A stretch of DNA of 64,000 nt from positions 40,610,001 to 40,674,000 of the forward strand of contig NC_043005.1 in the NCBI RefSeq assembly GCF_006345805.1. Reading direction: 5' to 3'. Numbering within the stretch: the stretch's first letter is position 1; each line of letters begins with the position of its first letter. This document shows positions 4,283-64,000 of this stretch, piece by piece. Source of the DNA: Octopus sinensis (lineage: Eukaryota). The position numbers were made by a program, and so were the translations under genes. The notes beneath the pieces were generated by a model. The model was not told where the DNA came from and ran no database searches. It saw nothing but the letters and a program-made list of their open reading frames with translations.

Positions 4283-4372
4283 GTGTTGAACCCGACGTTG
4301 GAGAAAAGATTTCACAAGCTGATTAACGATGAACAGCTGGGAAACCGATCCCCGTCGTAGCTGTTACCTAGA

Positions 4373-4830
4373 ATGCTTCAGCTTGCAGAAGACAATTCAT
4401 TACAGAGCGGTTTTCTCAAACAATTATTTTTTTCTCGCCTGCCTGCTAACGTCCAAGCCATCCTCGCACTGTTGTGCGATATCAGTACCGTTGAACAATT
4501 GGCGTCATCAACCGATAAAATTATGGAGCTATCAGCCGATAAAATATTGGAGATAACTATTCTGACGATACCTCTTCCTTATTCTTCTATTACCGTAGCA
4601 TCCAAGTTCCAGGATTTTCGGCGCACCACAGTACAAAACAATTGAAGACCTGGTAGCGGAAGTTCGCAATCTCTGTTTAGAAAGGAATACGGTCCCACAT
4701 GCAAGACGCCGATCTTGCTCAAGATCTCTATCCAGACATTGGTACATTGGCAATCAGGGATCTATATGTTGGTACCATATCAATTTCGGCGCCAAGGCAA
4801 GGAAATGCACACCACCTTGTTCATATAGTA
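4373..4830 (+). pseudogene. Gypsy gag remnant with C-x2-H-x9-C-x3-C (CHCC) motif
   Basis: FLKQLFFSRLPANVQAIL..EQLASSTDKIME, then CWYHINFGAKARKCTPPC at 4767-4820. Confidence 0.85.
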
Positions 4831-4899
4831 TCCAGAGAAACGTCAGAACGGAGCAGTAAGCATAGCTACTGTTTCTGGTATCACCCCACCAAGTCGTGC

Positions 4900-7720: not shown

Positions 7721-8096
7721 ATACAACTGTTCCCACTCCCATTACACATAATGCACGCACTACTGACACAACAAACTTCAAATTCGCCTTCATTAACAAT
7801 TGGGAGCGGAGGAAAAGTGCATTGGCCCCAAAAATTGACCCAGACATATCTAAACGAACATTGAATGAACTTTTCCCTCGAAATGTGATATTTTGTTTTC
7901 ATGCCATTTCCATTGTTGATGTATGCTATTTTCATTGTTGTGTTTGCACCTTGTTTTATTATCGTGCTGTTACATATTACATTTCCTTTGGTTTATTAGT
8001 TTGTACCTTAAAGGCTTCTGGTATGTTTTGCACTGTAGTTACATATTTTCTTTCGTCTCTCGTTATTGCCATAGCTTCACGACTGCCAAGGGAATC

Positions 8097-8543
8097 TGTA
8101 GCGTACCGTCGTGCCTGCTTGGATTGTCTCAGGGCTAAACATAAAACCCCGGAAGGGACACAGTATGCAGCCACGACACATGCACAAAACACAACAGCTC
8201 TTAAACAAAACAGAAGTCATGAAAAGCATATAAAGAGCCCGACTGACAGGACTCTCTCTTTTTCACAGGTAGGAATGCTAGCTCTCCTTAATTTCACCGC
8301 CCTACACAAGATATCGCGATGCCTCTCACAGTAGGCACCACCAAACAATGACTACACACATTTAATCACTAGTACCAGAATGCCATAACATTACCCCAGC
8401 CTTTGTATATCGTGCCACGAATCTCCACCAAAATAAAAATTATTATAATTATGTTTAGTGAGCGTTTATTTTTCATTTACACGCAGCCGACATCTGATCC
8501 TCACATTACCAACCAAACAATGAATAGACATATATTCACTAAA
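8097..8543 (+). repeat. 3' LTR of the Gypsy element
   Basis: Starts tgtagcgtacc after a decayed purine tract (aagggaa) and ends cactaaa, followed by TSD tgtc. Confidence 0.9.
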
Positions 8544-12289: not shown

Positions 12290-13627
12290 AACTCCGTTGT
12301 TAATTCAGTCCGGGCCAAAGCTGGGGGGATTTTTTTCCTGGACGCTCCTGGGGGCACTGGGAAAACTTTTGTCAACAAATTAATATTGGTTAAGATTAGG
12401 CGAACACAAGGCATTGCCCTAGCTGTGGCATCATCTGGAATTGCGGCTACTTTGTTGCCAGGCGGCAGGACAGCTCACTCCACTTTCAAGCTCCCGCTTG
12501 ACTTAGCGAAGACTGAGACACCAACTTGCAACATCAGTAACAGCTCCGATCAGGCAGAAGTCTTCAGACGATGCAAGCTTATCGTTTGGGATGAATGCAC
12601 AAAGGCCCACAGAGGTGCTCTTGAGGCACTAGATAGATCTCTCAGAGACATCAAACACTCTTCAGCTCCCATGGGGGGCATAACACTTCTTCTTTCAGGG
12701 GACTTCCGACAAACACTTCCCGTTATTCCCAAAGGGACTACAGCTGATGCAGTAAGTGCGTGTCTTAAGTCATCCACATTGTGGCCACTGGTGAAGACTC
12801 TCAAACTTCACACCAATATGCATGCTCATATGCGACGTGATATCACATCAGCAGCATTTTCTCACACGCTCCTTGCACTTGGCGAAGGCAAAATACCAGG
12901 GGATGAAAATGGTAATATTGCCATCGATTCCATTTGTACCATAGTTAAAATGCCTTCTAATCTCAGAGATGCAGTGTTCCCAGATCTACAAGCTAATTAT
13001 CAGAATATGGATTGGATTGGCTGAAGGGCTATTCTGGCCCCGAGGAATAAAACTGTTCACCATATTAATGATGAAATGCTAAAACTCATTCCTGGGGATG
13101 TCTATGTATATAAGTCTAGCGATACAACTCCTGACCCAGAGGACGTCATCAACTATCCAACAGAGGTACTCAATTCTTTTGAGCCCCCCGGACTACCACC
13201 ACACATTCTCAAACTTAAAGTTGGTGCCCCTATAATGCTCATTAGAAATTTGGTTCCCCCCAAACAATGCAATGGCACACGTTTGATCGTTAAGTCCTTA
13301 TCTCCCAATCTGATTGAGGCCACCATTATCACAGGGTGCGGTCGAGGCAACATTGTGCTCATACCTAGGATGCATCTTTTCCCATCAGGAGCAGACCTAC
13401 CTTTCATATTTCGGAGGTCCCAGTTCCCAGTAAGGCCATATTTCGCAATGTCAATTAACAAAGCACAGGGTCAAACACTGTCTGTGGCGGGAATACATTT
13501 GAGAGAGCCATGTTTCTCTCATGGTCAGCTTTATGTTGCCTGCTCGCATGTCGGCAGCAACAGTGATGCTTTCACATTCATTCCACAACGAAAAACAAAA
13601 AACATTGTGTACAAGGAGCTTTTATAG
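12290..13627 (+). pseudogene. Helitron Pif1-like SF1B helicase, single in-frame TGA at 13022-13024
   Basis: Walker A DAPGGTGKTF, AVASSGIAATLLPGGRTAHS, IVWDEC, SGDFRQTLPV, CNGTRL, FAMSINKAQGQTL, FSHGQLYVACS. The 12386 and 13076 ORFs are in the same frame. Confidence 0.9.
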
Positions 13628-16954: not shown

Positions 16955-47573
<30,619 letters not shown>

Positions 47574-50340
47574 CTATAAGCATGAAAAAAAAAGCATACA
47601 AAAGCAGCAGCAACAAAAGAGCTCATGGTGGTGCATTGAAATAAAATCAAGCTAAAAATGTTTGCAAATAAATGAGTAAATAAATAAAATTGGATTTTGT
47701 TGCGAGCAAAGATATTAAAAATAATTTAGACATAGATACATTTGCATGCAGTACAGACACACACACACACACACACCTTTAATTTCAATACACAAACTAT
47801 ATATTAAATCTATTTGATTCCCACATCTTTGTGCATACATACCAAAACAATTTTCAAATGTTAGAAAGACACTAAACCTTACTAAAGTTCAACTTTATTC
47901 ATCCAGCACCAGTTACACTAAATTTAGTTTACCAATGCTAAAAACATATGAACTCATATATCATTTACCATTCTAATAGTGATTTCTTAGAACCACAAGA
48001 CCAGTTCTTGTAAGAGAGGAGCATAGTTACCTGAACCGACACCAGTGCATTATAAGCACTCATTTCATGGACCCTAGAGAGAAGGCTGACAAAGTTGAAC
48101 GGAAGCCAAAGGATCATCATCATCATTATTTAGCATCTGTTTTCCATGCTGGCAAAGGTTGGACAAACAACAGAATCACATTGTGACTGAAATGCATCCT
48201 GTCCCTGCATACATCAAACCGAATCTTGTGAGGTAGTATATTAGACACACTAGTCTTGTCCGTCACCATCACACTATTCTATTATTGGTTTCTAATACAG
48301 GTATACACAGCCACAAATTTTAGGGGCAGAAGTATAGTTGATTGGATCAACCTACTGCATGACTGGTAATTATTTTACCAGTCTGGAAGTACAAAAGCAA
48401 AGTGGCTTAAGAAACAACTAAACAACACAAGATATTTTAACTGCTATTCTGCCAATTTGGCCATCCACTACCCTGGTTTAATATCACTGCAAAACACACC
48501 ACCAGTTTTGTAAAACAAGTATCTGTAAACATTTTCAACCACAGTATGTGACTTGTAGCTGTTTTATTAACTTTCAAGTGAGCATTTCGGGAAGAGAGGG
48601 CCAAGTAGATAATGTACTGCACTACCTGCTCAGAGGTTTTAAATATTTTGTTGCATTCTGCAGTAAATTTTACTTTACAATGTCTCAAGTTCATGTAACT
48701 ATTAGCAGGTAGGAGATAATGGATGTTAACTACAAGCAATCCAGGCAAAAATTTACCTCTCCTCAACGCTTTGAGACCAGACCTAAAGACTGTTTTTGCG
48801 TAAGTCCACCAGGGATGTCAATCTACCCTTAACATGGATAAGGCTTAGTAGTCAAATAGTGAGTACATAATTAAAACATCTACTTTGGTGTGTCAGTTTC
48901 TAGTATAAAGTATTAACTCATGTGTAATGTGAGGATTTTTATACAAAGCACCCAAATCAAAATTACAAGATAGTATTATACTTAAATGGAAAAAAGAGGA
49001 GAGAATATATTACTGATTTTCAGGTCCAAAATTGGGGGCCACATTATATTTGAGATCACATTGTACAAGAAAATGTGGTAGTAATAATTATTTCTGACAT
49101 ATACATGAGGAAAGATTTGGTCAATTATATAAAAAGTAGTACTTGGCTGGAACTATATTTTGCTGACTCAGGAAGGATGAAAGGCAAAATTCAAAACGCA
49201 GTGCCAATAATAATAATAATAATAATAATAATTTCTCAACTGACACAAGGATGTAACTCATAGGGAAATGTATGTAACTGAATGAATTCCCAGTACTTAT
49301 TTAAAAAAAAAAAAAAGGATTTTAACTGAGAATATTGTGGCAGAAAAGGTATTAGTCTGGCACTTAATCATCTTGCAAGGCCTCAGAGAGGCAGGGGCAG
49401 AAAAAAAAAAAAAAGAGGAAAATCCATGAGTGAGGAGTTATCTTCAGCAAAATCCTGGCTCAGATGCTTGCAGCAGTGGATTCCACTTAAAGCTCCTAAT
49501 GGGATTAGTGGTAGAGTTATGAATTAAACATTAGTGAAACAAATTCAGAAACAAACATACCACTCACTGCAGTCAAAAAACATCATATACTGACACTTCA
49601 AAACGAAAGACAAGTACATAGATAAACAAGGAGAGTACTGTAGAGTGGATAAATAAAGAAAAGAGTTGGTGGGGTAGTAACAGAAACATGAGGATGTAGC
49701 ATGAAACATTCGAAGTTAAAGCACTGCTATTTTCTTCAAAATGTGTAGGCTTCAAAAATTAATAAAACCACCCTGTTGTTGTTATTATTATTATTATTAT
49801 TACAAGTAGGTATTATAATGTAACATTGATAACTTAAGATAGGATTTATATAAAGGAAATTGTTAGCAAAGTACTAGAACATTAGTAGAGTACAGAGAGA
49901 ATAGAGTACATTATGTAATAGTATTACTGATGCAAATGATAGAAATAACTTGGTAGATTAAGTAAAAGCTGATCCCATCTAGATCTCAATAACTATCCTT
50001 AACCCTTTAGCATTTAAACCAGCCATATCTGGCCTAAATGCTCCACCCATTTTATGTTCAAACTAGCCAGATCCAGCTTCTCACACCTACTCTACAATGC
50101 CATTCTAAAAATAAAGTCACATCATTGAAATCACAAAGCTAGAAGACATTGAATAATTAATTCAAAATAACACGGACAAATAAGTATGTGTGACAGTGTC
50201 AGTAAGATATTTCTTATTACTATAAACTCTGTCATATGCTTTGGATTAGCTTCTGCAAGATTCTTGACAATAATACAAATACTAAAAATGTCAGGTGCCA
50301 CAAATTTTGTCTGATCTAAGAGTTAACACCTTCCAGTATA

Positions 50341-50646
50341 ATCATCATCCATTTTCCATGCTGGCATGTATTAGACAGTTTGACTGGAGATAGTAAACCA
50401 GAGAGCTACACCTGGAGTCAGTCTGTTTTGACTTGGTTTCTACAGCTGGATGCCCTTCCTAACATCACCAACTCCTCACAGTGAACTGGGTGTCCTTTAG
50501 TTTGACCTATCTTCTCAAGCACAACTATTTTCCCCACAATGAGCCTCAACATCTGAAGATCATATTTCACTACCTTGCCCTGTCTTCTTGGGTCTACCTC
50601 TGCCATGGGTTCCTTCCACAATTAGAGACCAGTACTTCTTTATGCA
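50341..50646 (-). mobile_element. RTE LINE 3' end fused to the common RTE-type tail
   Basis: The reverse strand resembles GRGRPRKTW..VVKYDL..LGL and ends in the ..ccaacccatgccagcatggaaaatgga(tga)n tail. Confidence 0.6.
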
Positions 50647-50681
50647 GCTGAGCCCATCTGGATCTCAATAACTATCCTTAA

Positions 50682-50892
50682 CCGTTTAGCATTTAAACCA
50701 ACCGTATCTAGCCTAAATGTTCTACCCATTTTATGTTCAAATCAACGAGACCCAGCTTCTCACACCTACCCTACAATGCCATTCAAAAAATAAACAATCA
50801 AATTATTGAAAAGCTACAAGATATTGAATGATTAATTCAAAAACAATGTTAATAAGCATTACATTTGACAGAATAATCTGAATGCGAAAGGG
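50682..50892. mobile_element. TTAA-flanked MITE (partial duplicate at 50003-50185)
   Basis: ttaa|ccgtttagcatt..aatgcgaaaggg|ttaa. Confidence 0.8.
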
Positions 50893-52807
50893 TTAAATGT
50901 CCTTGAGGCTTAAAAACTATGACTGTGCTTTGTATTTATTTCTATAGCTAAGTCTTTTGTTGATCTCAAAGAATAACTGAGCCACTCCAAAACTAATTCA
51001 CACAGAGTCAATCAGTAAGTCACTGAAGTTGAGAAGAAACAATGTGTATGTGCTTGACACATGACTTTTAGATTCCATTGTCAAAGACGGTTTGAACAGC
51101 AGCTTCCAGATTACAATGGATGAACGTATGAAACTTTTTCTGGCATGTAAATTTCCACAAATATGAAGCAGTTCAAATCTTGGTTTATCAGGGAGTCATG
51201 TCACTGATGCTTGATGAAAAGGAAAGGCAGTGCTCGTCATTTCATAAATAATTACATTTGTAGTCAGGACTTCAATGTCCCTTTCACTGTTGCAGTATGT
51301 CATCCATATCATTTTGGGGATGCACTGTTTAACATCCTGATTTACACTTCACACCTATGGCTTACTGTATCTGCACAACACACACACAGCATATGTATTC
51401 TTAGACATACATTTATTCTAACATATATCCATATACTCACATAAGTGAAGCCATATTACCTAATTGTTAGGATGTTGTGCTTCTGATTGTGATGTTGTGG
51501 GTTCAATTCCTGAACCAAGCAGTACATCACATTGTGTCTAAGAGTATAGTGTTTCATTTCGCATTGTTCCAATCTACTCAGCAGAAAAAGTGAGTATCAG
51601 CCTTATGCTGGTGCAGCACTTTTGCCCTCCAGCTCTCATGCCCTTGATGTTCTGCAGAGTTTGCTGAGTCATGAGGTGGGAGAGCTGAGAGGATGTTGAA
51701 ATCTACCCATGACTACACAGGTACCTGAAAGCAACTGACAGAAGCATGGTACAGGCTACCAAAGCCAGAATGGCTCATGAGTAATGCTTTTTATGTTTAG
51801 AAACAATGCAATGAGAACATGGTCTATCTCTAACCACCCATGAACAAATGAAAAAAAACACACCGACACAACAGGACAGCACAAGAGAGGAGCAACGTAC
51901 ATTCTTTTGTAAGGGGGAGCAAATTCCGTGATACATTGAGTGTGCATATTTTCGGTATGTGAAAGACATGCAGGGGTAGAGGTGTCTGTGATGGCAAGGT
52001 TTGGTGCTACATGTGGAAGATGGTGGATATGGTACTGGTAGTGCAAATTGGATTCAGAAAGTTGTTGTGGTGGTGGTGGTGGTGCGGGGAAAGAGATAGT
52101 AGTGAAGAAAAGACATAACAAAAGAATAGAAGCAACAGAAGCTGCTGCTGCTGCTGCCAGTGATAACATAGGAGAGCAGGTGAAAAGAACAAAAAAAAAA
52201 GGGCTTGGTGGAGCAAACTAAAGCAGAAAACAATAATAGCTACAAGAGAAAGGAGCCGTTTTGACAGGGTGGAGGGGTGGAGTTTAAGAATTGTTGACAG
52301 TAGATATTTCTTTCTCCTTATAACTATTATTTGTTTTTTAAGTCATCCTGGGAACAAAAAATTGCTCTTTCTTGTTTTTGTTTTCTTTCTTTTTGGCCTT
52401 TCTTATTTCTAAATTCATCTCAAAGATTTTCGACATCCTAAAGAATTTGTCTGTGGGTGTGCATGTATTTTTGAGAGAGAGAGAGAGAGAGTTTGTGTGT
52501 ATGTGTTGCATGCATGCACACACATGCACAACAGACTGAATCAGTGCATTTGTAGTTGTGGAGAGAAATGGATGTTCAGGTCAGGATATACAGATGTCTA
52601 TGTTTGTGTATATGCATATGTTTAAGTGTGTGTGTTCATTGTTGGCATGAAGAAGAGATGGTTACAGAGTTGTAATGAAACAGAATGGTTTAGCTGCTTA
52701 AATCAGAAAGAGAGAGAAGTAAAAAACCACAAGCGTCTACAGCACATGTAAATAAAAGAGGGAGTGTGCGTATGTTTGTGTGCATGTGTAAGCACATGCA
52801 TATGTCA

Positions 52808-52838
<31 letters not shown>

Positions 52839-54409
52839 GTGTGTAAGTGAAAGTTTGTGTATATGTACAAATGTATGAAAAAGAAGTTCAACATGATGAA
52901 AGAATATTTAATGTTAACGATACATTTATATGCTTAAAACATTTAGTCTTGCTGTAGAATGACAATATTCAGGTTATCTAAATATATTCCCATATCATTT
53001 TATAACAAGACTGTAAAGTTTAGACATATAAATATGTAATTAACGTTGGAAGTGTTTTCATTACGTAAACTTACTTATGAGTCAATAACTGAAACAAGTT
53101 CTAGACCTGTTTGTCAGAGTTTGTGTGACTATGTATTATCTGAGTGTATATGGCAGTTGAGACTCATGCATGCATGTGTTTGGGAGAAAGTAGACACATG
53201 TGTGTTCAATATTTGTATATGAACATGTCTTAATCATAGCATATTGCATCAATTCCAGAGTCTTAAATCACTTCAAACCTGATTCCCAGTTAAAATAAAA
53301 TGAATGGGGAGGATTGGATGGAAAGCAGATGAAGTCAGAAGGAAGATAGAAGGGGCTGGGGAGGGAGGACAAGACAACAATTCAATATTGTTATTCAATT
53401 TGTTATTTCATTCCTTGAGAGTTTCATGTCCTGGTACAAGGGTTGGGGCTTGAATCAAGAGTTCTAACCTACTTTCTCAGTCATTTGTCACCTGATACCA
53501 GAGAAACTAAGTACTATGTATATATATATATATATATGTATGAGAGATGGCAAAATTGTGAGTCTATTATATTATGTCTTAGTAAATGTGTGTCCATTGA
53601 TTTCAGCAATGAGTATTCCAGTGATTCTGACAACTAAAATATTTTTGTCGAAACCAGCAGAGATTCATTTACACTTTACTTTTAAATTTTAGCAATTATG
53701 TTATCAAATATAGATTTAATGGTGAAGAATAAACACACACCAAGATCTACACACTTTGCTGCAAGCACGCATTATCAGCGGCATGAATGAAAGGAGCTAG
53801 ACAGGGTGTGTTAGTAAGGAGACTTGTAATTTACTGTGTACTTAATACACAGTTAATACACCCTGAAATGTAGACAATGGTCAAGTGTGTGTGTGTGTGT
53901 GTGAGTGATATATATATATATATATATATATATTTTAGAGATAAAGAAAAATGAGAGAAAATGCATGTGGAAAGTGGATAGTTACATGGAATAAACAATG
54001 TGTAAATTATTCTTTCTTTTTTAAGGTTTTATTCAGGCTCTTGTATCAAAGTGGTGATCATATTTTTAACTGCTCTGTGAAAGCACATGATAAAGCCAAA
54101 AGGCTCTCAGCAGCAATGAAGAAGGATCAAATTGATTTATCAATAAGTTTTACTTTTATAAAACAGTCATTAGGGGTTCAGTTACTTTCCTCCGTGTGCT
54201 AAGAAGATATAGTGATTGGACTAGATCTGACCTTATCTAGAAAACAGAGTCAAGTTATAATCATGTGCATTATTGGGAGCACCAAAACAATGCAGATAAG
54301 ATTCAAGTTATAAATAAAGTTACAATCCTCAAGTTAAGCATATTTTTAGCCTTGCTGTGAAAATAGATGTGTGTGTGTGTGTGTGTGTGTGTGTGGTTGT
54401 ATGCACGCA

Positions 54410-55202
54410 CAGGGTACAGTGAATAAACTGTTGTCTAAATTATGCAAAATGAAAATAACACTGACAATCTTATTTTAAGAGATATTTACCAAAATTACAT
54501 AAAAATATCTTGAAAAACTAAAGAGTAAATTTATTCAATAAAAATTGCTTCAACCACAGCCTCCAGGTGACTGAAATCTCCTGCAACTCTTCTGGACGGT
54601 CTCCTTTTTGAAGTTGATGAATACTGCCATAATCCTTGCCTTCACTTCATTTTTGGTGTTACAAGGAGTTTTGTTGGTCTCTCACTCAACTGTACCCCAC
54701 ACATAATAATCAAAGGGGATGCAGTCTGGAGAGTTAGGTGGCCAGATGTTACAGGTGATGTAGCTGCAGAAATTGTTTGACAGTCATGATTGGATTCTCC
54801 TGCTTGTGTGGCACGGTGCAGAGTCCTGTTGCTAGACATAGGGTCTTTCAGCAGCCACTTTCTTGACCCAGGGCAGCACTATCTCCTCCAAGCATTTGAT
54901 GTAGACCTCCATCTTAAGTGTGAGACTATGCAGGAAGATGAATGGAGGCATGTTGCCATCACTAGTGATCACTCCAAACACCATGATCTTGACTGGATGT
55001 TTGATTTTTATCACTTCCGGTGCCAATGCCGGGCAACACAGCATGTCGTTTCTGGCAGAGTGAATTGCATCATGGTGCTGTTTTTCTCACAGACAATGCC
55101 CAACTGACCCTACTATACTGTGTAGTTGACAAAATCAAAGACAAACTGTGTATGTGGAAAATTAAAACTATAAAATGGTGACAATTTACCTATCACACCC
55201 TG
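54410..55202 (-). mobile_element. maT-like (DD37D Tc1/mariner superfamily) deletion derivative, 793 bp
   Basis: Termini cagggt../..caccctg. Remnant HPVKIMVFGVITSDG..PPFIF..YIKCLEEIVLPWVKKVAAERPYV. Confidence 0.85.
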
Positions 55203-55220
55203 TGCATGTGTGTATATGTA

Positions 55221-55312
55221 TGCATGTATATCTATGTGTTGATGTGTGTATATATATGCATGTATATCTATGTGTGGATGTGTATATATATATGCATGTA
55301 TATCTATGTGTG

Positions 55313-55345
<33 letters not shown>
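55221..55345. repeat. 36-bp minisatellite (about 3 units) grading into (TA)n
   Basis: tgcatgtatatctatgtgtggatgtgtatatatata starts at 55221, 55257 and 55293. Confidence 0.85.
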
Positions 55346-55347
<2 letters not shown>

Positions 55348-58300
55348 GTTTGTGCCAACACAGACTACCACTCGTGACCTCAAAATGTAGTCAGTCATTT
55401 TGTTTAATGGGTACAAGAACTGAGATTAAATTTTCTTAGAAGGAATGAATCCGTACTACAAACACATTCAGTCTTTCTAGATGACTATAAGTTAACAATC
55501 GATACCTTGTAGATAGCATGAAATCAGAAATTATATTTTGTAGGATGGAGGATGTGAGAAATGGGAGTTTCATGCATTTCTTTCAATGGGTATTAGTAAT
55601 GCAAGTGAAAAAGTTGTTTTGTTATTCAGTATTAAGAATCAGAAACCTATAAATTAGGAAACAGCTAATGCAGATTATGAACATTCAGTGTATTGATTTG
55701 TAGATATCTCATCTTTATTGCAGCACAAGCTATCCTAACACTTCTTTTTAAAAACAAACTAGGAGAGAGTTTACTGAAGTTGTGATTGCTACATTGGACT
55801 GATTCAGTGACAGAATAGATTTCTTTACTGAGTCCAAGTCTTCTCCATTTTAAAGGAAGATGTTCCAATTAGGAACCAAAATTTGCCAACTTGATTCGTA
55901 AAAAATTTACCACTACATCACAGTCCATGCATTGGAATATTATACTACGTTCCAGTGGAATGAAACTGAAACTTGGTAGTATCATAAACCCAGGAGGAGG
56001 AAGTAAAATACGCTGACACCAGCAGGATTGAACTTAAAACAGATGAAACTAAATACTGAAAAAGATATTCTGGCCAATGTTCTATAAAATCTAGTATCTA
56101 CTGAATATAACAAAGTTAAGATTTAGAAGAAAATGTTTTAAAACTACGAAAACATTTTTCATAATTTTCTTTCGGAAATCTTACATTTATTATAATAGCC
56201 AAAGAGAAAAGTATAATAAAATAACTAAAAAAAATGTAAGAACAAGTTGAGAAAATGTGAAATAAATGGGGCAAAGGAAGATTTAAGAAACCCAAAATAC
56301 AAAAACAAGACAAAGTCTACAAGTACTGTTGTTGATGCATTTATTAAAAGTTGCCAGGCCAGCAAATCTGGTAATGACTATAACAAAAATCACATGTCTT
56401 GTAATAGCAACACAGCTGTAGATCTGTAAAAAAGCAAAGTAGTAAGCTGCAGATGGGAATACAACTTGCCTGTTGTCCTTAAAAAGTTAGTCAGTGAGAT
56501 ATAAAAGAACGAATTTAGGAGGGCAAGAGAGAGAGAACTGTGAGTAAAGGGAAATGGTTTTGTATTTGTTTTATTGTTTTTCACTCATGTTCTCACAGGA
56601 TTATTGTTTTGCAAATCTAAGGCATTTGCACAGTGTTGGAACAGTTATTTTCATTCATGGATGCTCTTAAACTATACAGCCTTGGAGTTAGATGGGAATG
56701 TTGGAGACCACAGAGATAAACTCCATTAAGGACACAAAACAGCAGCTTCAATAGAATTTGGATTTATGATCATGCAATTATTAAGTAGTTAGGCATCTTA
56801 ACACCATTGTGACTACAAAATTACAAGGGGTGTCACTGTGAATGAGTACAATGTGTATAACAGAGAAGTCATAAAGACAATACATGAAATAACAGTATGC
56901 AAAGGTAGATTAATGTTAGTTAGCTGTAAACAAGTAGTAAAGAAACAAAAGCAAATTCAATTAGAAAATTTTGGATTAATATGACCGAGGTCTGGTAGAA
57001 ACAACCAATCCATGCCAGCATGGAAGACAAATGTTAAGTAATGATGATGATTTTTTTTTATCTATGCAGGAAACTATCTTGGAAAATAAAATAACAGAAG
57101 TGTAAAATTATAATTTTCACACTTCTCTCAGGAATACTAGTAACCTATCTCACCTAAATTAATAATTTCTTACATAGGCAAAAAGCCAGAAAAGATTTTG
57201 GAAAGGAACAGTTAATTATAACCACCTGAATACTTATTTTATAGCACTTGGAAGAATAAAGCTGTGGATCTGAACTCAATACAATGAGTTATTGTATGCA
57301 GACACTAATGATTCTGCCAAACCATCAGCCAACTACTTAAATTATTAGCTCCATCTATGTATCAAATCAAAATGGTCATAAACTCTGTTGAAAACCTACC
57401 ATCACTAACATTTACTACTACTGTTATTATAGATTTAATGAAATTGTTAAGTTTGATATTACTGCACTAAGAAGTTATGTAAATTTATTTTAACTGGCAG
57501 CATTAAGATTTAGACAATGATGATTATAGTGATGGTAATCATATTAGTATGATGTTTAAGTTGATAACCATGAATGTGAGCCTAATTACAAATATTGGAA
57601 GTATGTGCTGCCTGCTTCAATCAAAAGTGCAGTAATACCAAGCCAGCCATATTCAGTGACCGAGTTATTTTCACATTTAAAACTGAAGTAGGTGTTTATT
57701 TTATAGGGAAAACTGTTTCCCCTATAAACATTATCAGCTTTAATTTTTGCTACTCTGTTTAGCTGATAGGTAAATTGTCTAATTCAATGAGCAAAATGCT
57801 GGTCTGTGATATAATCACAGCATATAAAGATATTAATTTCTCATTTAGAAATACATAGTTTTCTCTGAGCCAGCAAATATATTGATATGGTTTCATTCTG
57901 GCATTTATTAACAGAGAAACCAAAACTTCAGTGAAAATAAAGACAACATGCAAAAGGAAAATAATTCTGGAATGAATATATTTATGAAGGGCAGTTCAAA
58001 CAAATATCTTAATGTAAGGAAAACTTAAGCTTAAAGAAAATAATTCCTTTCCATTTTTGAGATTTGTTATATGTAGATGATACTGACTTCCATAGGAAGT
58101 TTCATGTTTCAGTTTATTTAACAAGAAACTCTTTTTAATGAGCACAGTATAAGATTACTTAAATGTTTTATTAAAATTTTCAGGGCTGTTGCTCAGTTAC
58201 TGATGCAAAGTGTAAATACAATACCTCTTTTATACTTGTTTGAAAGCGTACTTTTTTTCAAGAATGAATGAATTAATTAATACTAATGCATATGTGTGTG

Positions 58301-59818
58301 TGTATTTATATTTAAAAAATCAATAGTGCTCAGTGTTTCTATAAAAGGTAGGGTTGCATAATTCTGCAATGCTGTATTTTTCTATCTGCTTGAATAAGTC
58401 GTAAAAGTCAGACTTTCAAGTATTGAACTAACTTAATTATTCAAAATTTTTGAGTTTAACCTCAACCACTATTTCTCTCTAACAACATCTAAGTTATTTC
58501 TTTACTTTTTTTTTTTTTTATGTCACCTGTATCATGTATTCAGTTTACATGTTCATAACCAAACACAGATTTTCTTTGCAAATATCATTATTAATTTAAC
58601 AATTTGGCAAGGTATTCATGTGTGGATATTCTAAAAGAAAGTTATATTTTTCTCTAAAAACATCAAGTTTGTGATGAAAAAATGCAAAATATTTGTCTGA
58701 AGATGAATAAATAAAATATCAGGCATTTTATCTTATTCCACACACTAAACTCTTGTTAGTAATCTAGATTAATAAGCAGCATCAAAGATATTTAACTTTT
58801 GATAAGTGGAATAAGTAAGGACTGGATTAAAGGCATTACCCTCTCCTTGCTCACTCTCTTGTCTGTTTCATCCACCATCTCCATTAACTAATGCAAACTG
58901 CACTCACTTCTCCCCACCATTCCCCCCATCCCTGCACGTCTCCCTCTTCCACAACCCTCTCACCCCTTTCCCAGCACACCTACACCCTTGCTTTCCCCCC
59001 CTTTTCAACACCCCACATCCCAGACATCCACTCTCATTCGAACATCACACCTCCCACTTTGCCTTTTTCATATTCCTCCTTTATTTTTCTTCAGAGACAT
59101 CAAGATTCTTCCCCCTATTTTTAAGAAGCAAACAAAATGTTTAAAAGGGAGTAGTTCTGGTGAAGCATTGTGCGATATTACATTAAAGAGACTTGTTGGC
59201 TAAGGCCGGAACAATGGGAGAATATCCCTTGCTGTTCTGCATGTCCTGAAGAAGAGGTCATAGCCCAGAAATACAAAAATAAAAAGTAAAACTACAACTT
59301 TATTTTGTTTACTTTTATTTTAGTAGTTTACTTTATATCTTCTTGCACTGTTCCAGCCTTACCCAACAAATCTCTTTGATAAAAAATTTGTTAAAACTTG
59401 TCCTTCTTTTGTTATTTTTGCTTTTGATCATTGCCTTCACAATACATTTTTAATGTTTACATGGACTGCTTATCTTTTTTCTCACAACTGTATACATTAC
59501 ACACAACCTCCTGTACCCCACTCACCTCTTATAATTTCCTTTTTTACCTTTTCTCTCATCTTCTATTCCGCTTTCCATCTCATCATTTAAATATCAGTTT
59601 TCCATGCCGGCATGGGTTGGATGGTTTGACAGGAGCTGGCAAGCCAAAGAGTAGCACTATACTCCATTTGTCTGTTTTGACATGGTTTCTATAGTTGGAT
59701 GCCCTTGCCATTCCTAACAAATCACATGGTTCTGGGCTCAGTCAACCAAAGCCTTGTGAGTGGATTTGGCAGATGGAAATTGAAAGAAGCCTATCATGTA
59801 TGTATATGCACACACACA

Positions 59819-60587
59819 CAGGGTGTAACAGGTAGATTGTCATTGGGCACTGTCTGTGAGGGAAACAGCAACATGATGCAATTCACTGCCAGAAATTTGT
59901 AAACAACATGCTGTTCTGCTTAGCATTTGTGCCGGAAGCTCCAATACAAACATTTCAGAGTGCTTGGGTGTCAGGCTGAGGACATGTACTGTGAGTGATA
60001 AAAATCAAACCCCCAGTCAACATTATGGTGTTTGGAGTGATCACTAGTGATGGCAACGTTATGTCTCCATTCATCTTCCCACACGGCCTCACACTCAACA
60101 CAGAGGCTACATCAAAGGCCTGGATGAGGTAGTGCTGCCCTGGGTCAAGAGGGTGGCTGCTGGAAGACCCTATGTCTGGGAACAGGACTCTGCACCATAC
60201 CATACAAACAGGAGAACCCAGACTGTCAAACAATTTCTGCAACTACATCACCCCTAACATCTGGCCACCTAACTCCCCCAGACTGCAACCCCCTTGATTA
60301 CGTGTGGGGTGCAGTGGAGTGAGAGACCAACAAGACTCCTTGTAACACCAAAGATGTAGTGAAGGCAAAGATTATGGCAGCATTCACCAACTTAAACAAG
60401 GAGACTGTCCAGAAGAGTTGCAGGAGATTCCAATGTTATCTGGAGGCTATGGTTGAAGCTATTTTATTGAATAAATTTACTCAATATCTTGAAATACTAA
60501 ATATTTCAAGATATTTTTATGTAATCTTGGTAAACATTTCTGTTTACCAAGATTACATAAACAGGGTGCTCTGTTCACCACACCCTG
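59819..60587 (+). mobile_element. maT-like (DD37D) deletion derivative, 769 bp, inverted relative to the 54410 copy
   Basis: Termini cagggtg../..caccctg. QDSAP..WPPNSPDCNPLDYVWG. Spacing of the last two Asp is about 37 after mental repair of a small deletion. Confidence 0.85.
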
Positions 60588-60589
60588 TG

Positions 60590-60598
<9 letters not shown>

Positions 60599-60640
<42 letters not shown>
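60599..60640. repeat. (TA)n microsatellite next to the maT element end
   Basis: Direct reading. Confidence 0.95.
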
Positions 60641-60643
<3 letters not shown>

Positions 60644-61070
60644 TATATCTGTATGCGTCTTTGTGTCTGTGTCCCTCCACCACCCCTTGACAACTGGTGT
60701 TGGTGTATTTACGTTCCTGTAATTTAGCAGTTCGGCAAAGGAGACTAACAGAATAAGTACTAGGCTTAACAAATAAGTCCTGCGGTTAATTAGTTTGACT
60801 ATAACACTTCAAGGTAGTGCTTCAGCATAGCTGCAGTCAAACGACTGAGACAAGTAAATATATAAAAAGAGATTATATCCTCACCACAAGACACCTGAAG
60901 AAGGCTGGGGCATACGACAGCTGAAACATAGCGAAAGCAGCAATCAAGATGAGGACACCAGTCCAACTAAACAGTGTACCTGATATAAATTCCTCACCTC
61001 AGAAATACAGAATTGCATCATCCAATCAGTACAGTGCCAACAAATGACAATGGAGGTTTTTAAGCCTTAA

Positions 61071-61292
61071 CCCTTCAGCATTTAGATTACTCTGTCAAAT
61101 GTAATCCATATTTATTCACAATGTTTTGAATTAATCATGTATGATCTCAAAGCTTCACAATTTTGATAATGTAAATGTTTTAGTTTCAGAATGGCATTGT
61201 AGGGTAAATGTGAGAGGCTGCATCTGGTCAGACTGAACAAAAAAAGAGGTAGAATATTTGGGCCAGATATGGCTGGTTTGAATGCTAAAGGG
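61071..61292. mobile_element. TTAA-flanked MITE, opposite orientation to the other copies
   Basis: ttaa|cccttcagcatt..aatgctaaaggg|ttaa, with the internal sequence reversed. Confidence 0.85.
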
Positions 61293-63374
61293 TTAAAGAT
61301 TCATTCTGTTACTGACTATGGGCATAGAGTTTTGGACAAAGGTGTTGGTTAATGCAGTGCAATCACCTAGAGGTGCTGAGTTCAACCTCAGGTAAGGAAC
61401 TAAGTTGAATTGCAAGATACCAGAAGAAGGCTGGATCATACAATAGCCGAAATATGGTAATTGTCATTATCATTATTTAACATCTGCTTTCCATGTTGGC
61501 ATGGGTTGGATGGTTTGACATGGAGCTTGCTAGCAGGAACTATCTGTACTCCAACTATCTGTTGTGGCATGGTTTCTATAGCTGGATGTCTTTCCTAATG
61601 CCAACCACTTAACAGAGTGTGCTAGGTGCTTTTTATGTGCTACCAGCACCGGTGCATTTATGCAGCACTGATACAGGTGCTTTTTAACTGGCAGCAGCAC
61701 CTGAAAGAACAAGCCTGTATGTGTGAAAGACAGCAATTTTGCTTAGCTTGACATATCTTACCAAATACAGCAAATCACCACATAACAATCAATAAGCAGA
61801 CAACAGTCTAATGTAAATAGTGTACATATTCTATCCTCAACTCTTTTTCTCCATTTATAATTTTTGCCATTTTTTGGCACCTTTTCCCCTCATTTTATGA
61901 TTTTCATTTTCCCAACATGCTCAACTTTTGTATTTTCCTTGCTTCCCTCCCTTCTTTCTGTTCCAAATCATACCCCCACTTTGTCTACCACTTTCTCAAA
62001 ATATATTAACTTCAGCCAAGCCACTTTCCTCAATGCACCACTGCATCATCCCTCATGGTTTTGGACTCTACCTTTACCTTACCTTCTACTCCAAACCCTT
62101 CTATTGAGCCCATCCTCTTCCACAAATCCTGTTTCCTCCTGTGCCACCTTCTGATCCACACCGTAACAAATTCACAACCTCAACCTTCTTTCCCAGGCCT
62201 GCTTTCTCTTCCTCTCCTTGCTTATTCATAGTTTCATTTACCACCTGAACCACCCACTTTCTCTATTTCATCACCTCCATTAAATTACATAAACTGTACT
62301 CTCTTTCATGCCAATCACTCCTCCCCACCACCCTGAAGCTCATTTTCCTCTCCTAGTCTCCCTGCTCCTCCAATTCCCTTTTCCAGCCCATCACCTCCAC
62401 TTTCCTACTTTACTTTTCTTTTGATGAAGGACCACTGAGATTCTTTCCTTTCCTTTCTTAAGCATTAAGTTATGCAATATCCATCAAAACTTGTCCCACC
62501 TGTGTTGTCTTTTTCTCTTTTTCTTGTCTTCACTGTATAATTCAGCACAGAAAACTAAGTACAAGCTGCCAGCATGAAGATGGCCACAAAAAGAAGGTAA
62601 TCATGTGCAAGAATGCCATTTTTGTTAATATAACATTATTAATATATAAATATCAAGATGTACTACTTTTTATGATGCTCTGTCACTGCCTGGATCTTGT
62701 ACTTTTAACTATCCAGATATCTGTTTCATAAAAACTTATACAAAAATAATATTTTTCTGAGGCAGAAAGCTAATTTTTGTAAATGGAACCAAAGCATAGC
62801 AAAAGTCAACTCTGGGACTTAATTGTACAATAACTATTTTATAATCTGAGAGGCATGAAATTTGAACTCAGAACAATGAAACTACAAATTCCTGGCTCTT
62901 TTCTAGAAAACTTACTTCTCCTGCAGAGAAATAATAATCATCATCACCATTGTCACATTCCATTTTTTCATGCTGGCATAGTTTAAGTTGGATGCATCTG
63001 TAATACAACACCAAGTTATCTATCTTGATCATGTCTTATCTCAGACCTTGTGTTCTCCCATAACAAATTATTCCCAAGTCTCCTTTTATCTACTCCTACT
63101 GATTCAGGTATCTTCCAGTAAGTACTAAGCTAAAATAATTTTCACATAGTTACATATATGATATGAAAAGAGTCAGTGACTAACAACCATTTAAAGAAAA
63201 TAGGCAACCACCAACATTTTATATGAACACCTTTGTTGATAGCCTGGAAAAAAAAATTATTTATCAAACTTCATACATGCAAATACACAAAACAAAATAT
63301 AAATATGACAGCTATGATAGACAAAAGACATTTTTCATTTTCTATTATATAATGAATTGTGAAGACTTGTGGCC

Positions 63375-63620
63375 TTGGGATGCTGCACTCATAATTGCTA
63401 AATCATGGGTTCAACTCCCTCACTTAGTGAAATGTTGTTTTCTGAGCGAAACACTTCACTTCACATTGCTTCTATCAGCTCAGCTGTAAATGTGCAATCC
63501 TGCAATGGAATAACCTCCCTATCAGGAGAAATGTTGGTCTGCTTGTCTAGCAAACAGGTTAGCATCATTTGAAAGCTGAAATGATGCCAAGCACATTATA
63601 ACCAGCAATGTATAATGACA
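63375..63620 (+). mobile_element. Old tRNA-derived SINE
   Basis: Decayed B-box gggttcaactccc and core ttctgagcgaaacacttcacttcacattgct..ctcagctgtaaatg. Confidence 0.55.
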
Positions 63621-64000
63621 CCTGGTAGTCTGGTTTATACCGTGATATACCATGATCAATAATAAATTGGATCGATCAATAGATTCTTTCTCAAAAACAA
63701 ACTTAAGATGTGAATATTAACAAAATAAGATTTGTTGTTCATTCACTAGTGTATGAGTTGTAAACACCTTATAAATTTTTACACTGCTTTTGGTTTCTTT
63801 AAAAGTGAAATGTAAAATAGTAAATAAAGGAAAAACTACCTACCACCATAAGGGTTCAAAACATGCAAATAGTTGCTGGTGAAAGGCTAACCTCTTTGTT
63901 ATATAGCATGGATTGAGCAGAAGATTCCACTTACCTGAAAGTAATACATGAAATATAAATAAAAATTCATTGAAGAAACAAATGCAGTTAATAGTTAAAC

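What the first reader, a model, noticed from the sequence alone, without database searches (positions are those of the whole stretch)
63929..63998. Candidate recursive splice site (zero-length exon) TTTCAG|GTAAGT deep in a >14-kb WDR47 intron
Seen: the minus strand reads gtttaactattaactgcatttgtttcttcaatgaatttttatttatatttcatgtattactttcag|gtaagt. That is branch-point-like TTAAC motifs, over 60 nt with no other AG, a T-rich tract, and a CAG acceptor directly abutting a perfect GTAAGT donor (junction 63935/63934). Downstream of the AG all three frames hit stops within about 30 codons, so it does not open a coding exon. Known: YAG|GTAAGT ratchet points mediate recursive splicing of long introns in Drosophila and vertebrate neural genes. 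Inference: recursive splicing may operate in this cephalopod-like genome, where I am not aware of it being described.
Basis: partly seen in the sequence, partly recalled or inferred. Interest (0 to 1): 0.75.

Follow-up and report, generated by a model that had tools for sequence, protein, structure and literature searches.

The report
Conserved recursive-splice-like site, octopus WDR47
A back-to-back splice acceptor and donor (…TTTCAG|GTAAGT) lies deep in a 65-kb intron of the Octopus sinensis WDR47 gene and is kept, inside a small conserved island, in the distant octopod Argonauta hians; this makes it a credible first candidate for stepwise ("recursive") intron removal in a mollusc, although no RNA evidence has been examined.

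Summary
The minus strand reads an AG-free, T-rich tract, then CAG|GTAAGT, with the junction at 63935|63934. The window is 100% identical to Octopus sinensis chromosome CM016867.1, and the gene is WDR47. The site lies 49.2 kb into it. No exon lies beyond 64000.

Within the window the motif alone is weak evidence. What changes the picture is that the orthologous 38.3-kb intron of Argonauta hians holds exactly one sense-strand AG|GTAAGT (simulated chance P=0.013). It sits in sequence homologous to and collinear with the octopus site. The longest exact shared blocks are AGGTAAGT and GCATGTTTT, and lineage-specific repeats flank the island.

The regenerated donor (CAG|GTAAGT) is much stronger than the cryptic downstream donors, which predicts that the short exon is skipped. 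Including it would introduce a premature stop. No annotated isoform uses the site.

The same intron also carries an annotated alternative 36-nt microexon that begins GTAAAC.

Best reading: a conserved ratchet point or cryptic recursive exon (about 0.55). The main rival is an unannotated poison or alternative exon. No RNA data were available.

The parts
63936..64000 (-). Window part of the T-rich, AG-free tract upstream of the acceptor (polypyrimidine / branch-site region). It continues 17 nt beyond the window edge, to L006 55630.
   Evidence: 53% T, 21% GC, no AG; the AG-free zone is 82 nt in L006.
63987..63998 (-). Two TTAAC branch-point-like motifs (63998-63994 and 63991-63987; candidate branch A at -61 and -54).
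   Evidence: They fit the yUnAy pattern, but they are not positionally conserved in Argonauta and lie further upstream than the fly ratchet-point branch points (-21 to -36). Their status is inferred only.
63929..63937 (-). Core ratchet-point motif CAG|GTAAGT. Acceptor AG at 63936-63935, junction 63935|63934, donor GTAAGT at 63934-63929.
   Evidence: It is the only AGGTAAGT on the sense strand of the 65.5-kb intron. AGGTAAGT is conserved exactly in Argonauta.
63892..63934 (-). Candidate 43-nt cryptic recursive exon, ending at the weak donor GAG|GTTAGC (donor at 63891-63886).
   Evidence: donor 6.9 bits against 12.9 for the regenerated donor. Inclusion gives a stop 7 codons into the next exon.
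63844..63934 (-). Alternative 91-nt cryptic recursive exon, ending at GTG|GTAGGT (donor at 63843-63838).
   Evidence: donor 8.1 bits. It shifts the frame, and the stop falls at the junction.
63862..63867 (-). TGCATG (Rbfox-type GCAUG core) inside GCATGTTTT, the longest exactly conserved block outside the core motif.
   Evidence: O. sinensis +69..+73; Argonauta +78. Any role as a splicing enhancer is inference.
63801..64000 (-). Window part of the conserved island that aligns with Argonauta hians (L006 55633-55845 aligned to L007 35838-36069).
   Evidence: The island is unique in both loci and is flanked by lineage-specific repeats.
47574..63934 (-). The 16,361-nt intron segment that would be removed in the second recursive step, from the regenerated donor to the acceptor ...cttatag|.
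47241..47573 (-). Next WDR47 exon (333 nt; aa 517-627 of isoform X2; phase-1 acceptor). It is itself skipped in some isoforms.
   Evidence: Exon 1 plus this exon reproduces the isoform X2 prefix exactly.

Best explanation
The site is most likely an evolutionarily conserved recursive splice site (ratchet point) in the long intron of octopod WDR47 that follows the exon encoding aa 1-516.

Proposed mechanism. All steps are inferred from sequence; none has been seen in RNA.
1. The upstream exon is first joined to the acceptor AG at 63935. That exon is either exon 1, which ends ...CCAG, or the alternative 36-nt microexon, which ends ...AGAG. This step removes 49.2 kb or 16.6 kb of intron.
2. Recognition of the acceptor uses the 82-nt AG-free T-rich tract. 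It probably also uses exon definition across a short cryptic exon of 43 or 91 nt, bounded by a weak downstream donor. A conserved GCAUG about 70 nt downstream may help.
3. The ligation recreates a consensus donor: CAG|GTAAGT, or GAG|GTAAGT after the microexon.
4. The recreated donor is much stronger than the cryptic exon's own donor, so it wins the competition. It is spliced to the acceptor of exon 47573-47241, removing the last 16.4 kb.
5. Nothing from the site remains in the mRNA.

The site therefore breaks a 65.5-kb intron into smaller steps. It may also guard against inclusion of a frame-shifting cryptic exon.
For: Shown directly by sequence:
- The motif and its 3'-splice-site-like context are present, with TT at -5/-6 as in 99.5% of fly ratchet points (Duff et al.).
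- The site is on the sense strand of a 65,523-nt intron. It is the only AGGTAAGT there, with none on the antisense strand.
- There is no exon upstream of it beyond the window. No nested protein-coding gene is called in the locus.

Comparative evidence:
- The orthologous 38.3-kb Argonauta hians intron has exactly one sense AG|GTAAGT. It has a 12-T tract, Y 0.89 and a 116-nt AG-free zone, with none on the antisense strand.
- Using thresholds fixed before Argonauta was examined, simulated chance is P=0.013. For O. sinensis it is 0.037.
- The two sites are orthologous. There is an in-register HSP, -78..+134 against -78..+153.
- The downstream 100 nt align better to the Argonauta site than to any of 2,831 other GT-anchored positions (z 5.7). 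The reciprocal test gives p 0.0026.
- The island is one of only about 7 unique collinear blocks in the whole intron.
- The island is single-copy and bracketed by multi-copy repeats.
- The longest exact blocks are AGGTAAGT and GCATGTTTT.

Consistency with the donor-competition rule of Joseph et al. 2021:
- The regenerated donor scores 12.9 or 11.8 bits. The cryptic donors score 6.9 and 8.1 in O. sinensis and 9.2 in Argonauta.
- Including the cryptic exon shifts the frame and gives an early stop.
- The codon pattern between the species is not protein-like: 2 synonymous against 18 non-synonymous differences, from my reading of alignment A1.
- No annotated isoform (X1-X7) and none of six hypothetical inclusion products is on record.

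Context:
- The same intron carries an annotated alternative microexon that begins GTAAAC. Its regenerated donor (7.7) and its own donor (7.8) are balanced, a Ubx-like arrangement.
- The segments are 32.5, 16.6 and 16.4 kb. The site sits at 50.4% of the microexon-to-exon intron. Fly sites tend to lie near midpoints, and the median fly segment is 16.4 kb.

Base rate: at least 57% of conservation-predicted fly ratchet points were later verified.
Against: - No RNA evidence of any kind was available.
- Recursive splicing has not been reported in any cephalopod or mollusc in the searched library.
- The O. sinensis pyrimidine tract is only average for this gene (Y 0.72, longest run 5). Fly ratchet points have stronger-than-normal acceptors.
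- The candidate branch points at -54 and -61 are further upstream than in flies and are not conserved.
- The downstream cryptic donors are not at aligned positions in the two species.
- The Argonauta site lies at 82% of its intron, not near the midpoint (geometry from the coordinates), and no microexon orthologue was found there.
- There is no sense-over-antisense excess of ratchet-like sites in the window, in the full intron at relaxed thresholds, or in 126 kb of gastropod WDR47 loci.
- Only two genomes could be compared. The O. vulgaris and O. bimaculoides loci were too long to fetch.
- The thresholds were chosen after seeing the O. sinensis site.
- The 5'-splice-site matrix is a generic metazoan one written from my own knowledge, not trained on octopus.
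- A conserved GCAUG and a phase-1 frame open for 31 and 32 codons in the two species would also fit a real regulated exon.
Confidence: 0.55

Rival explanations
1. The AG at 63935 is the acceptor of a real, unannotated, alternatively included exon that happens to start with GTAAGT. This could be a regulated poison exon of about 41-91 nt, or an alternative terminal exon giving a WD40-less protein of about 547 aa. It may be Rbfox-regulated through the conserved GCAUG. Its function would be isoform or dosage control rather than stepwise intron removal.
For: - Conservation is strongest downstream of the junction, where the exon and its enhancer would lie, including GCATGTTTT.
- Each species has a usable donor 41-43 nt downstream. 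In Argonauta it is a good one, CTG|GTAAGA at 9.2 bits.
- The phase-1 frame stays open for 31 and 32 codons, and the alignment gap is 9 nt.
- Inclusion gives a premature stop, which is typical of poison exons.
- The region is alternatively spliced anyway: a microexon, exon 47573-47241, 45729-45673 and 33803-33675.
- O. vulgaris has an annotated truncated 727-aa form.
Against: - None of the O. sinensis, O. bimaculoides, O. vulgaris or Argonauta models contains such an exon.
- None of six hypothetical products is among about 15 billion proteins.
- The donor positions and the exon lengths (43 vs 41 nt) are not conserved.
- The substitution pattern is not protein-like (2 synonymous vs 18 non-synonymous).
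- The regenerated donor is far stronger than the exon's own donor, which in flies forces skipping.
- No AATAAA is seen in the first roughly 300 nt downstream.
Confidence: 0.25
2. The motif has no splicing function. It sits by chance in AT-rich intron DNA, or inside a conserved island whose role is something else, such as a transcriptional enhancer.
For: - The 9-mer alone is at chance frequency in the window.
- Similar-quality AG|GT sites occur on the antisense strand.
- Gastropod orthologues have none.
- The intron holds a few other conserved islands with no splice motif.
- The scan that produced the finding looked at many features and many windows.
Against: - An independent replicate exists in Argonauta (P=0.013) at the orthologous, collinear position.
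- AGGTAAGT is one of the two longest exactly conserved blocks in the island.
- Both species keep a long AG-free pyrimidine tract and TT at -5/-6 immediately upstream, even though that tract's sequence is not conserved.
Confidence: 0.12
3. CAG|GTAAGT is the ordinary donor of an unannotated upstream exon, for example an alternative first or untranslated exon driving a short WD40-only isoform like those annotated in gastropods and insects. On this reading the pyrimidine tract is incidental.
For: - CAG|GTAAGT is simply the consensus donor. The only other copy in the window is a real exon end.
- Short WDR47 forms lacking the N-terminus are annotated in several molluscs and insects.
- One frame is open to the window edge.
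Against: - The upstream sequence is 21% GC and 53% T, preceded by a 24-nt poly-T run and a SINE-like repeat.
- In Argonauta the upstream sequence is ttttttaattttttttttttag preceded by a multi-copy repeat.
- Conservation lies downstream of the junction, not upstream.
- The faint protein similarity of the open frame to WDR47 aa 44-65 is at chance level (4.1 bits, E=4.9).
- No octopod isoform starts there.
Confidence: 0.05

Closest known systems
Drosophila intronic ratchet points (Ubx, kuz, osp, luna, and others; Hatton 1998, Burnette 2005, Duff 2015, Pai 2018, Joseph 2018/2021)
   Same: - Juxtaposed (Y)nNCAG|GTAAGT on the sense strand of a long intron.
- TT at -5/-6.
- The core is conserved while the flanks diverge.
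- A short, out-of-frame cryptic exon with a weaker donor lies downstream.
- Segment sizes are about 16 kb.
- The host is a neuronal gene.
- The co-occurrence with an alternative microexon that itself starts with a donor-like sequence mirrors Ubx (mI/mII plus a ratchet point in one 73-kb intron).
   Different: - The phylum is different (Mollusca, Lophotrochozoa).
- The O. sinensis pyrimidine tract is average rather than exceptionally strong.
- The putative branch points lie further upstream.
- No RNA evidence exists.
- No genome-wide sense-strand enrichment has been demonstrated for cephalopods.
Vertebrate recursive splice sites and RS-exons (Sibley 2015; Blazquez 2018; Boehm 2018, as summarised in PMC8605326 and PMC6224609)
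   Same: - AG|GTAAGT in very long introns of neuronal genes.
- Recognition through exon definition of a cryptic exon.
- A choice between the regenerated donor and the exon's own donor.
- The annotated octopus microexon (cag|GTAAAC...GAG|gtaact) looks like an expressed RS-exon.
   Different: - Vertebrate cases are mostly in introns longer than 100 kb, and only a handful are fully suppressed intronic sites.
- EJC-dependent control is untested here.
Conserved poison or cassette exons with downstream (U)GCAUG (Rbfox-regulated neuronal exons)
   Same: - A conserved intronic island.
- GCAUG within about 30 nt of a putative donor.
- A frame-shifting short exon.
- A neuronal microtubule-associated host gene.
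   Different: - The exon boundaries and length are not conserved.
- The exon would begin with a perfect donor that should out-compete its own.
- No annotated transcript includes it.

Membership tests
Recursive splice site / ratchet point | [quoted passage not shown] (Y)nNCAG|GTAAGT | tested here: met
   ...tattactttcag|gtaagt. It has the top 5'-splice-site score in the window (12.8 bits) and Y 0.72 over -20..-3.
Recursive splice site / ratchet point | TT at -5/-6 and a strong acceptor (stronger than ordinary acceptors in flies) | tested here: inconclusive
   TT is present in both species. The O. sinensis tract is only average for this gene (0.72 against 0.67-0.83; runs of 5 against 3-16). The Argonauta tract is strong (0.89, a 12-T run). 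The AG-free zones are long, at 82 and 116 nt.
Recursive splice site / ratchet point | Sense strand of a long intron (flies: 11-133 kb; segments 2.6-64 kb) | tested here: met
   The intron is 65,523 nt. The segments are 49.2 + 16.4 kb, or 32.5 + 16.6 + 16.4 kb with the microexon.
Recursive splice site / ratchet point | Splicing of the upstream exon to the site regenerates a functional donor | tested here: met
   Exon 1 ends ...CCAG and the microexon ends ...AGAG. The junctions would read CAG|GTAAGT (12.9 bits) and GAG|GTAAGT (11.8 bits). This was tested in sequence only.
Recursive splice site / ratchet point | Evolutionary conservation of the core motif above that of the surrounding intron | tested here: met
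   An orthologous AG|GTAAGT is present in Argonauta hians, inside a unique collinear island. Chance is P=0.013. Only two genomes were available.
Recursive splice site / ratchet point | A downstream cryptic RS-exon whose donor is weaker than the regenerated donor, usually out of frame | tested here: met
   O. sinensis has candidates at +43 (6.9 bits) and +91 (8.1 bits). Argonauta has one at +41 (9.2 bits). All are weaker than 12.9 bits, none is a multiple of 3 in length, and inclusion gives an early stop. The donor positions are not conserved.
Recursive splice site / ratchet point | RNA intermediates: exon-to-site junction reads, saw-tooth coverage, lariats to and from the site | not testable with these tools
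   No RNA-seq read data can be queried here. Annotated protein isoforms only show that the site leaves no trace in the models.
Recursive splice site / ratchet point | Genome-wide excess of such sites on the sense strand of long introns in the species | tested here: inconclusive
   Only about 175 kb of octopod sequence was available. Strict sites are 1 sense vs 1 weaker antisense in O. sinensis, and 1 vs 0 in Argonauta. Gastropod WDR47 loci give 0 vs 1. The test has no statistical power.
Expressed alternative / poison exon | The exon is present in mature transcripts or annotated models, with conserved boundaries | tested here: not met
   No isoform from four octopod annotations contains it. Six hypothetical products are absent from the collection. 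The donor positions differ between the species. NMD-sensitive transcripts could escape annotation.

The most novel reading that the evidence does not exclude
Recursive splicing operates in cephalopods, and therefore in Lophotrochozoa, which would make it ancestral to bilaterians. Octopod WDR47 would show a Ubx-like design: an alternatively included 36-nt RS-type microexon plus a fully skipped ratchet point, together cutting a 65-kb intron into pieces of 32.5, 16.6 and 16.4 kb. A conserved GCAUG would suggest neuron-specific (Rbfox-type) help in recognising the cryptic exon.
Probability: 0.4. Interest if true: 0.7.

Novelty: new member of a known kind. Interest (0 to 1): 0.6.

Why it matters
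Recursive splicing has been demonstrated experimentally only in Drosophila and vertebrates. For other invertebrates there is only a computed excess of motifs (sea urchin, bee, beetle, mosquito; PMC2773006).

Cephalopods have vertebrate-sized genomes, very long neuronal introns and unusual RNA processing. How they remove such introns has not been studied: no paper in the searched library connects recursive splicing with cephalopods beyond one that mentions each term once in passing.

A ratchet point conserved between Octopus and Argonauta gives a concrete locus that can be tested by PCR. If it is confirmed, three things follow:
- The mechanism would extend to Lophotrochozoa.
- An ancient origin for recursive splicing would gain support.
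- Annotators of cephalopod genomes would have reason to look for such sites and for the cryptic poison exons they suppress.

If the site turns out to be an unannotated poison exon instead, it would be a conserved regulator of WDR47 dosage in a neuronal microtubule-associated protein.

Tried and rejected
1. Is the open frame across the site (LTINCICFFNEFLFIFHVLLSGKWNLLL...) a decayed or real WDR47 LisH/CTLH exon? tblastn gave a faint match to aa 44-65. A profile of 13 N-terminal domains scores only 4.1 bits, E=4.9 against the window's ORFs, and exon 1 lies elsewhere. Rejected as chance.

2. Is the site part of a repeat family? There is no second copy in the window or in the 107-kb locus. Only the flanks are repeats.

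3. My early inference that exon 47573-47241 corresponds to about aa 277 was wrong. It was based on a weak Mya/other-homologue match. The exon encodes aa 517-627. My first coordinates for that exon were also off by one, and were corrected.

4. The first two protein searches returned no cephalopods. The tool appears to drop hits longer than about 1.75 times the query. A chimeric longer query recovered the Octopus and Argonauta proteins.

5. Several look-ups gave nothing:
- ORF 63223-63489.
- An exact 24-mer in metagenomes.
- P0268 and P0124.
- The O. bimaculoides and O. vulgaris loci, which are too long for DNA to be returned.

6. Rfam and tRNA scans of the window were empty.

7. Gastropod WDR47 loci (Aplysia, Patella, Bulinus, Physella, Biomphalaria) have no ratchet-like site. 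Their genes are compact and the Aplysia locus is 29% N, so this result is uninformative.

8. No orthologue of the microexon was found in Argonauta.

9. A coding alternative terminal exon was considered. The substitution pattern is not protein-like, and no such product is on record.

Full report
**Observation.** It is a T-rich stretch with no AG, containing two TTAAC motifs, followed by ...tattactttcag|gtaagt with the junction at 63935|63934. The 66 nt before the junction are 53% T and 21% GC. That places them in the lowest 4% of 66-nt windows in this intron; the gene's coding exons are 37-51% GC. All three frames after the AG reach stops, and the longest open frame runs 30 codons.

As a bare motif the site is unremarkable:
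- YAGGTAAGT occurs twice in the window against 1.2 expected. The other copy is the true donor of a WDR47 exon at 20898|20897.
- With a short pyrimidine requirement the expectation is 0.10 per window.
- Ranking every AG|GT in the window, the site is the best combined acceptor-plus-donor. Look-alikes of decent quality are as frequent on the antisense strand as on the sense strand.

**Where the window comes from and what the gene looks like.** WD40 exons on the minus strand match WDR47. The first two protein searches found only gastropod and insect relatives. The search tool seems to discard hits much longer than the query, and a longer chimeric query recovered the octopod proteins.

The locus of O. 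sinensis isoform X1 (L006; GCA_006345805.1, CM016867.1) is 100.000% identical to the window over 52,046 nt. The window's minus strand equals the L006 plus strand.

The gene model was checked by translation. Exon 1 alone encodes aa 1-516 and ends ...CCAG|GTAAGT. Joined to exon 47573-47241 it reproduces isoform X2. With a 36-nt microexon in between it reproduces isoform X1.

The intron holding the finding is therefore 65,523 nt, not merely more than 14 kb. The site lies 49.2 kb from its 5' end and 16,361 nt from its 3' end.

The sequence beyond 64000 contains no exon. The AG-free T-rich tract simply continues, for 82 nt in all. It is preceded by a 24-nt poly-T run and a SINE-like repeat. No nested protein-coding gene is called in the locus.

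**Comparative test.** The Argonauta hians WDR47 locus (L007) has the same architecture: a single exon for aa 1-~531, then a 38.3-kb intron. That intron contains exactly one sense-strand AG|GTAAGT...tttctattttttaattttttttttttag|GTAAGT. It has Y 0.89, a 116-nt AG-free zone and TT at -5/-6, and there is none on the antisense strand. Block-wise Markov simulations give P=0.013 for such a site arising by chance there, and P=0.037 for the O. sinensis intron.

The two sites are orthologous rather than independent coincidences:
- A sensitive search gives an in-register alignment, -78..+134 against -78..+153, and a second collinear block about 1.25 kb downstream.
- The 100 nt after GTAAGT in O. sinensis align better to the Argonauta site than to any of 2,831 other GT-anchored positions in that intron (z=5.7). 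The reciprocal test gives p=0.0026.
- Across the whole intron pair only eight unique same-strand blocks align, seven of them collinear. They include this island and the region just before the next exon's acceptor.
- The island is single-copy. In Argonauta it is squeezed between two multi-copy repeats.
- Within the alignment, the longest exact blocks are AGGTAAGT, preceded by Ts, and GCATGTTTT about 70 nt downstream.

**How it probably works.** Current fly and vertebrate models say that a ratchet point is recognised as the start of a short cryptic exon. The donor regenerated at its 5' end then competes with the exon's own donor, and the stronger one wins (PMC8605326).

Here the regenerated donor would be CAG|GTAAGT (12.9 bits on a generic metazoan matrix that I wrote from general knowledge), or GAG|GTAAGT (11.8 bits) after the microexon. 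The nearest downstream donors score 6.9 (+43) and 8.1 (+91) in O. sinensis and 9.2 (+41) in Argonauta. Skipping is therefore predicted.

Inclusion of either candidate exon would shift the frame and stop translation within seven codons of the next exon, or at the junction itself. The differences between the two species in the phase-1 frame are not protein-like: 2 synonymous against 18 non-synonymous, from alignment A1. None of the annotated octopod isoforms, and none of six hypothetical inclusion or read-through products, contains the sequence.

The annotated microexon in the same intron (L006 39062-39097, outside the window) is ...ttaaacag|GTAAAC...TTAGAG|gtaact. It too begins with a donor-like sequence. 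Its regenerated donor (7.7 bits) and its own donor (7.8 bits) are balanced, which fits its alternative inclusion.

The resulting geometry is 32,512 + 16,614 + 16,361 nt. The microexon lies at 49.6% of the full intron, and the site lies at 50.4% of the remainder. This resembles the fly tendency toward midpoints and segments of about 16 kb, and the Ubx arrangement of RS-type microexons plus a ratchet point.

**What argues against.**
- There is no RNA evidence.
- The O. sinensis pyrimidine tract is only average for this gene, whereas fly ratchet points have unusually strong acceptors.
- The TTAAC motifs and the cryptic donors are not positionally conserved.
- The Argonauta site is at 82% of its intron, and no microexon orthologue was found there.
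- No sense-strand excess could be shown with the little sequence available.
- Only two genomes could be compared.
- The conserved GCAUG and the open frames of similar length would also suit a real, regulated poison or terminal exon. That is the main rival.

**Comparison with what is known.** The feature meets every sequence-level criterion of a ratchet point that I could test: the motif, TT at -5/-6, a long intron, a regenerated donor, a weaker out-of-frame cryptic exon, and conservation of the core. The defining RNA criteria could not be tested.

In flies, 91 of 160 ratchet points predicted from conservation alone were later confirmed. That is the main reason I put the probability near 0.55.

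I found no paper in the held library that describes recursive splicing in a cephalopod or mollusc. A motif excess has been computed for sea urchin and several insects (PMC2773006).

**Verdict.** I classify it as a new member of a known kind, of moderate-to-good interest because it is cheap to test and would extend recursive splicing to a third major animal clade.

Noticed in passing
L006 39062-39097 (O. sinensis, outside the window; about 16.6 kb upstream of the site): An annotated alternative 36-nt microexon encodes GKHLGRVGSCLR. It is present in O. sinensis X1 and X3-X6 and in O. bimaculoides X1. It starts with a donor-like GTAAAC (cag|GTAAAC...GAG|gtaact), so it has the architecture of an expressed recursive exon. 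No orthologue was found in Argonauta.
   Followed up: partly
L006 5001-6549; L007 3001-4594: In octopods the whole N-terminal half of WDR47 (aa 1-516, covering LisH/CTLH/COR and the coiled coil) is encoded by one 1.55-kb exon. The comparison is only partial: the 719-aa Aplysia model lacks most of that N-terminal domain, and its first ~340 aa, which begin about 180 aa into the family's N-terminal domain, are split over at least five exons. This suggests intron loss in the 5' half of the octopod gene.
   Followed up: no
window 47241-47573, 45673-45729, 33675-33803 (minus strand): Three cassette exons differ among the annotated isoforms: a 333-nt exon, a 57-nt microexon and a 129-nt exon. An O. 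vulgaris 727-aa model ends by read-through past 33675 (to 33624), giving a form without the WD40 domain.
   Followed up: partly
window 20892-20900 (minus strand): The only other CAGGTAAGT in the window is the genuine donor of WD40 exon 21024-20898. Separately, four exons of the gene (acceptors near 25089, 23576, 21024 and 17101) begin with GT right after the acceptor AG. None of them continues as a donor consensus.
   Followed up: yes
window 4300-8300 (+) and 12386-13627 (+): Transposon remnants lie downstream of the gene. One ORF contains a reverse transcriptase domain (RVT_1, E 8e-8). Two ORFs form a PIF1-like helicase (E 2e-50 and 2e-14), of the Helitron type.
   Followed up: partly
window 59994-60482 and 54523-55015: Two copies of a repeat of about 490 nt, 87% identical to each other, lie in inverted orientation inside the long intron. 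A SINE-like element at window 63400-63650 (+ strand), and another just beyond the window edge (L006 55215-55425), have further copies in the locus.
   Followed up: partly
L006 25300-25378, 26221-26362, 34104-34162 (outside the window): Other short unique islands in the same intron are conserved and collinear between O. sinensis and Argonauta, and carry no splice-site motif. An example is GTGTGAATA-TTTGGCATTTTCACTGACATTTT. Their function is unknown; they may be regulatory.
   Followed up: no
window 47574-47690 (minus strand); L006 71959-72062 vs L007 42784-42872: The roughly 100 nt before the acceptor of exon 47573-47241 are conserved with Argonauta (71% identity). This is unusual for an intron in which almost nothing else aligns, and it is consistent with regulated use of this alternative exon.
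   Followed up: no
tool behaviour: the search for homologous proteins returned no hit longer than about 1.75 times the query length. This hid all the full-length cephalopod WDR47 proteins until a longer query was used.
   Followed up: yes
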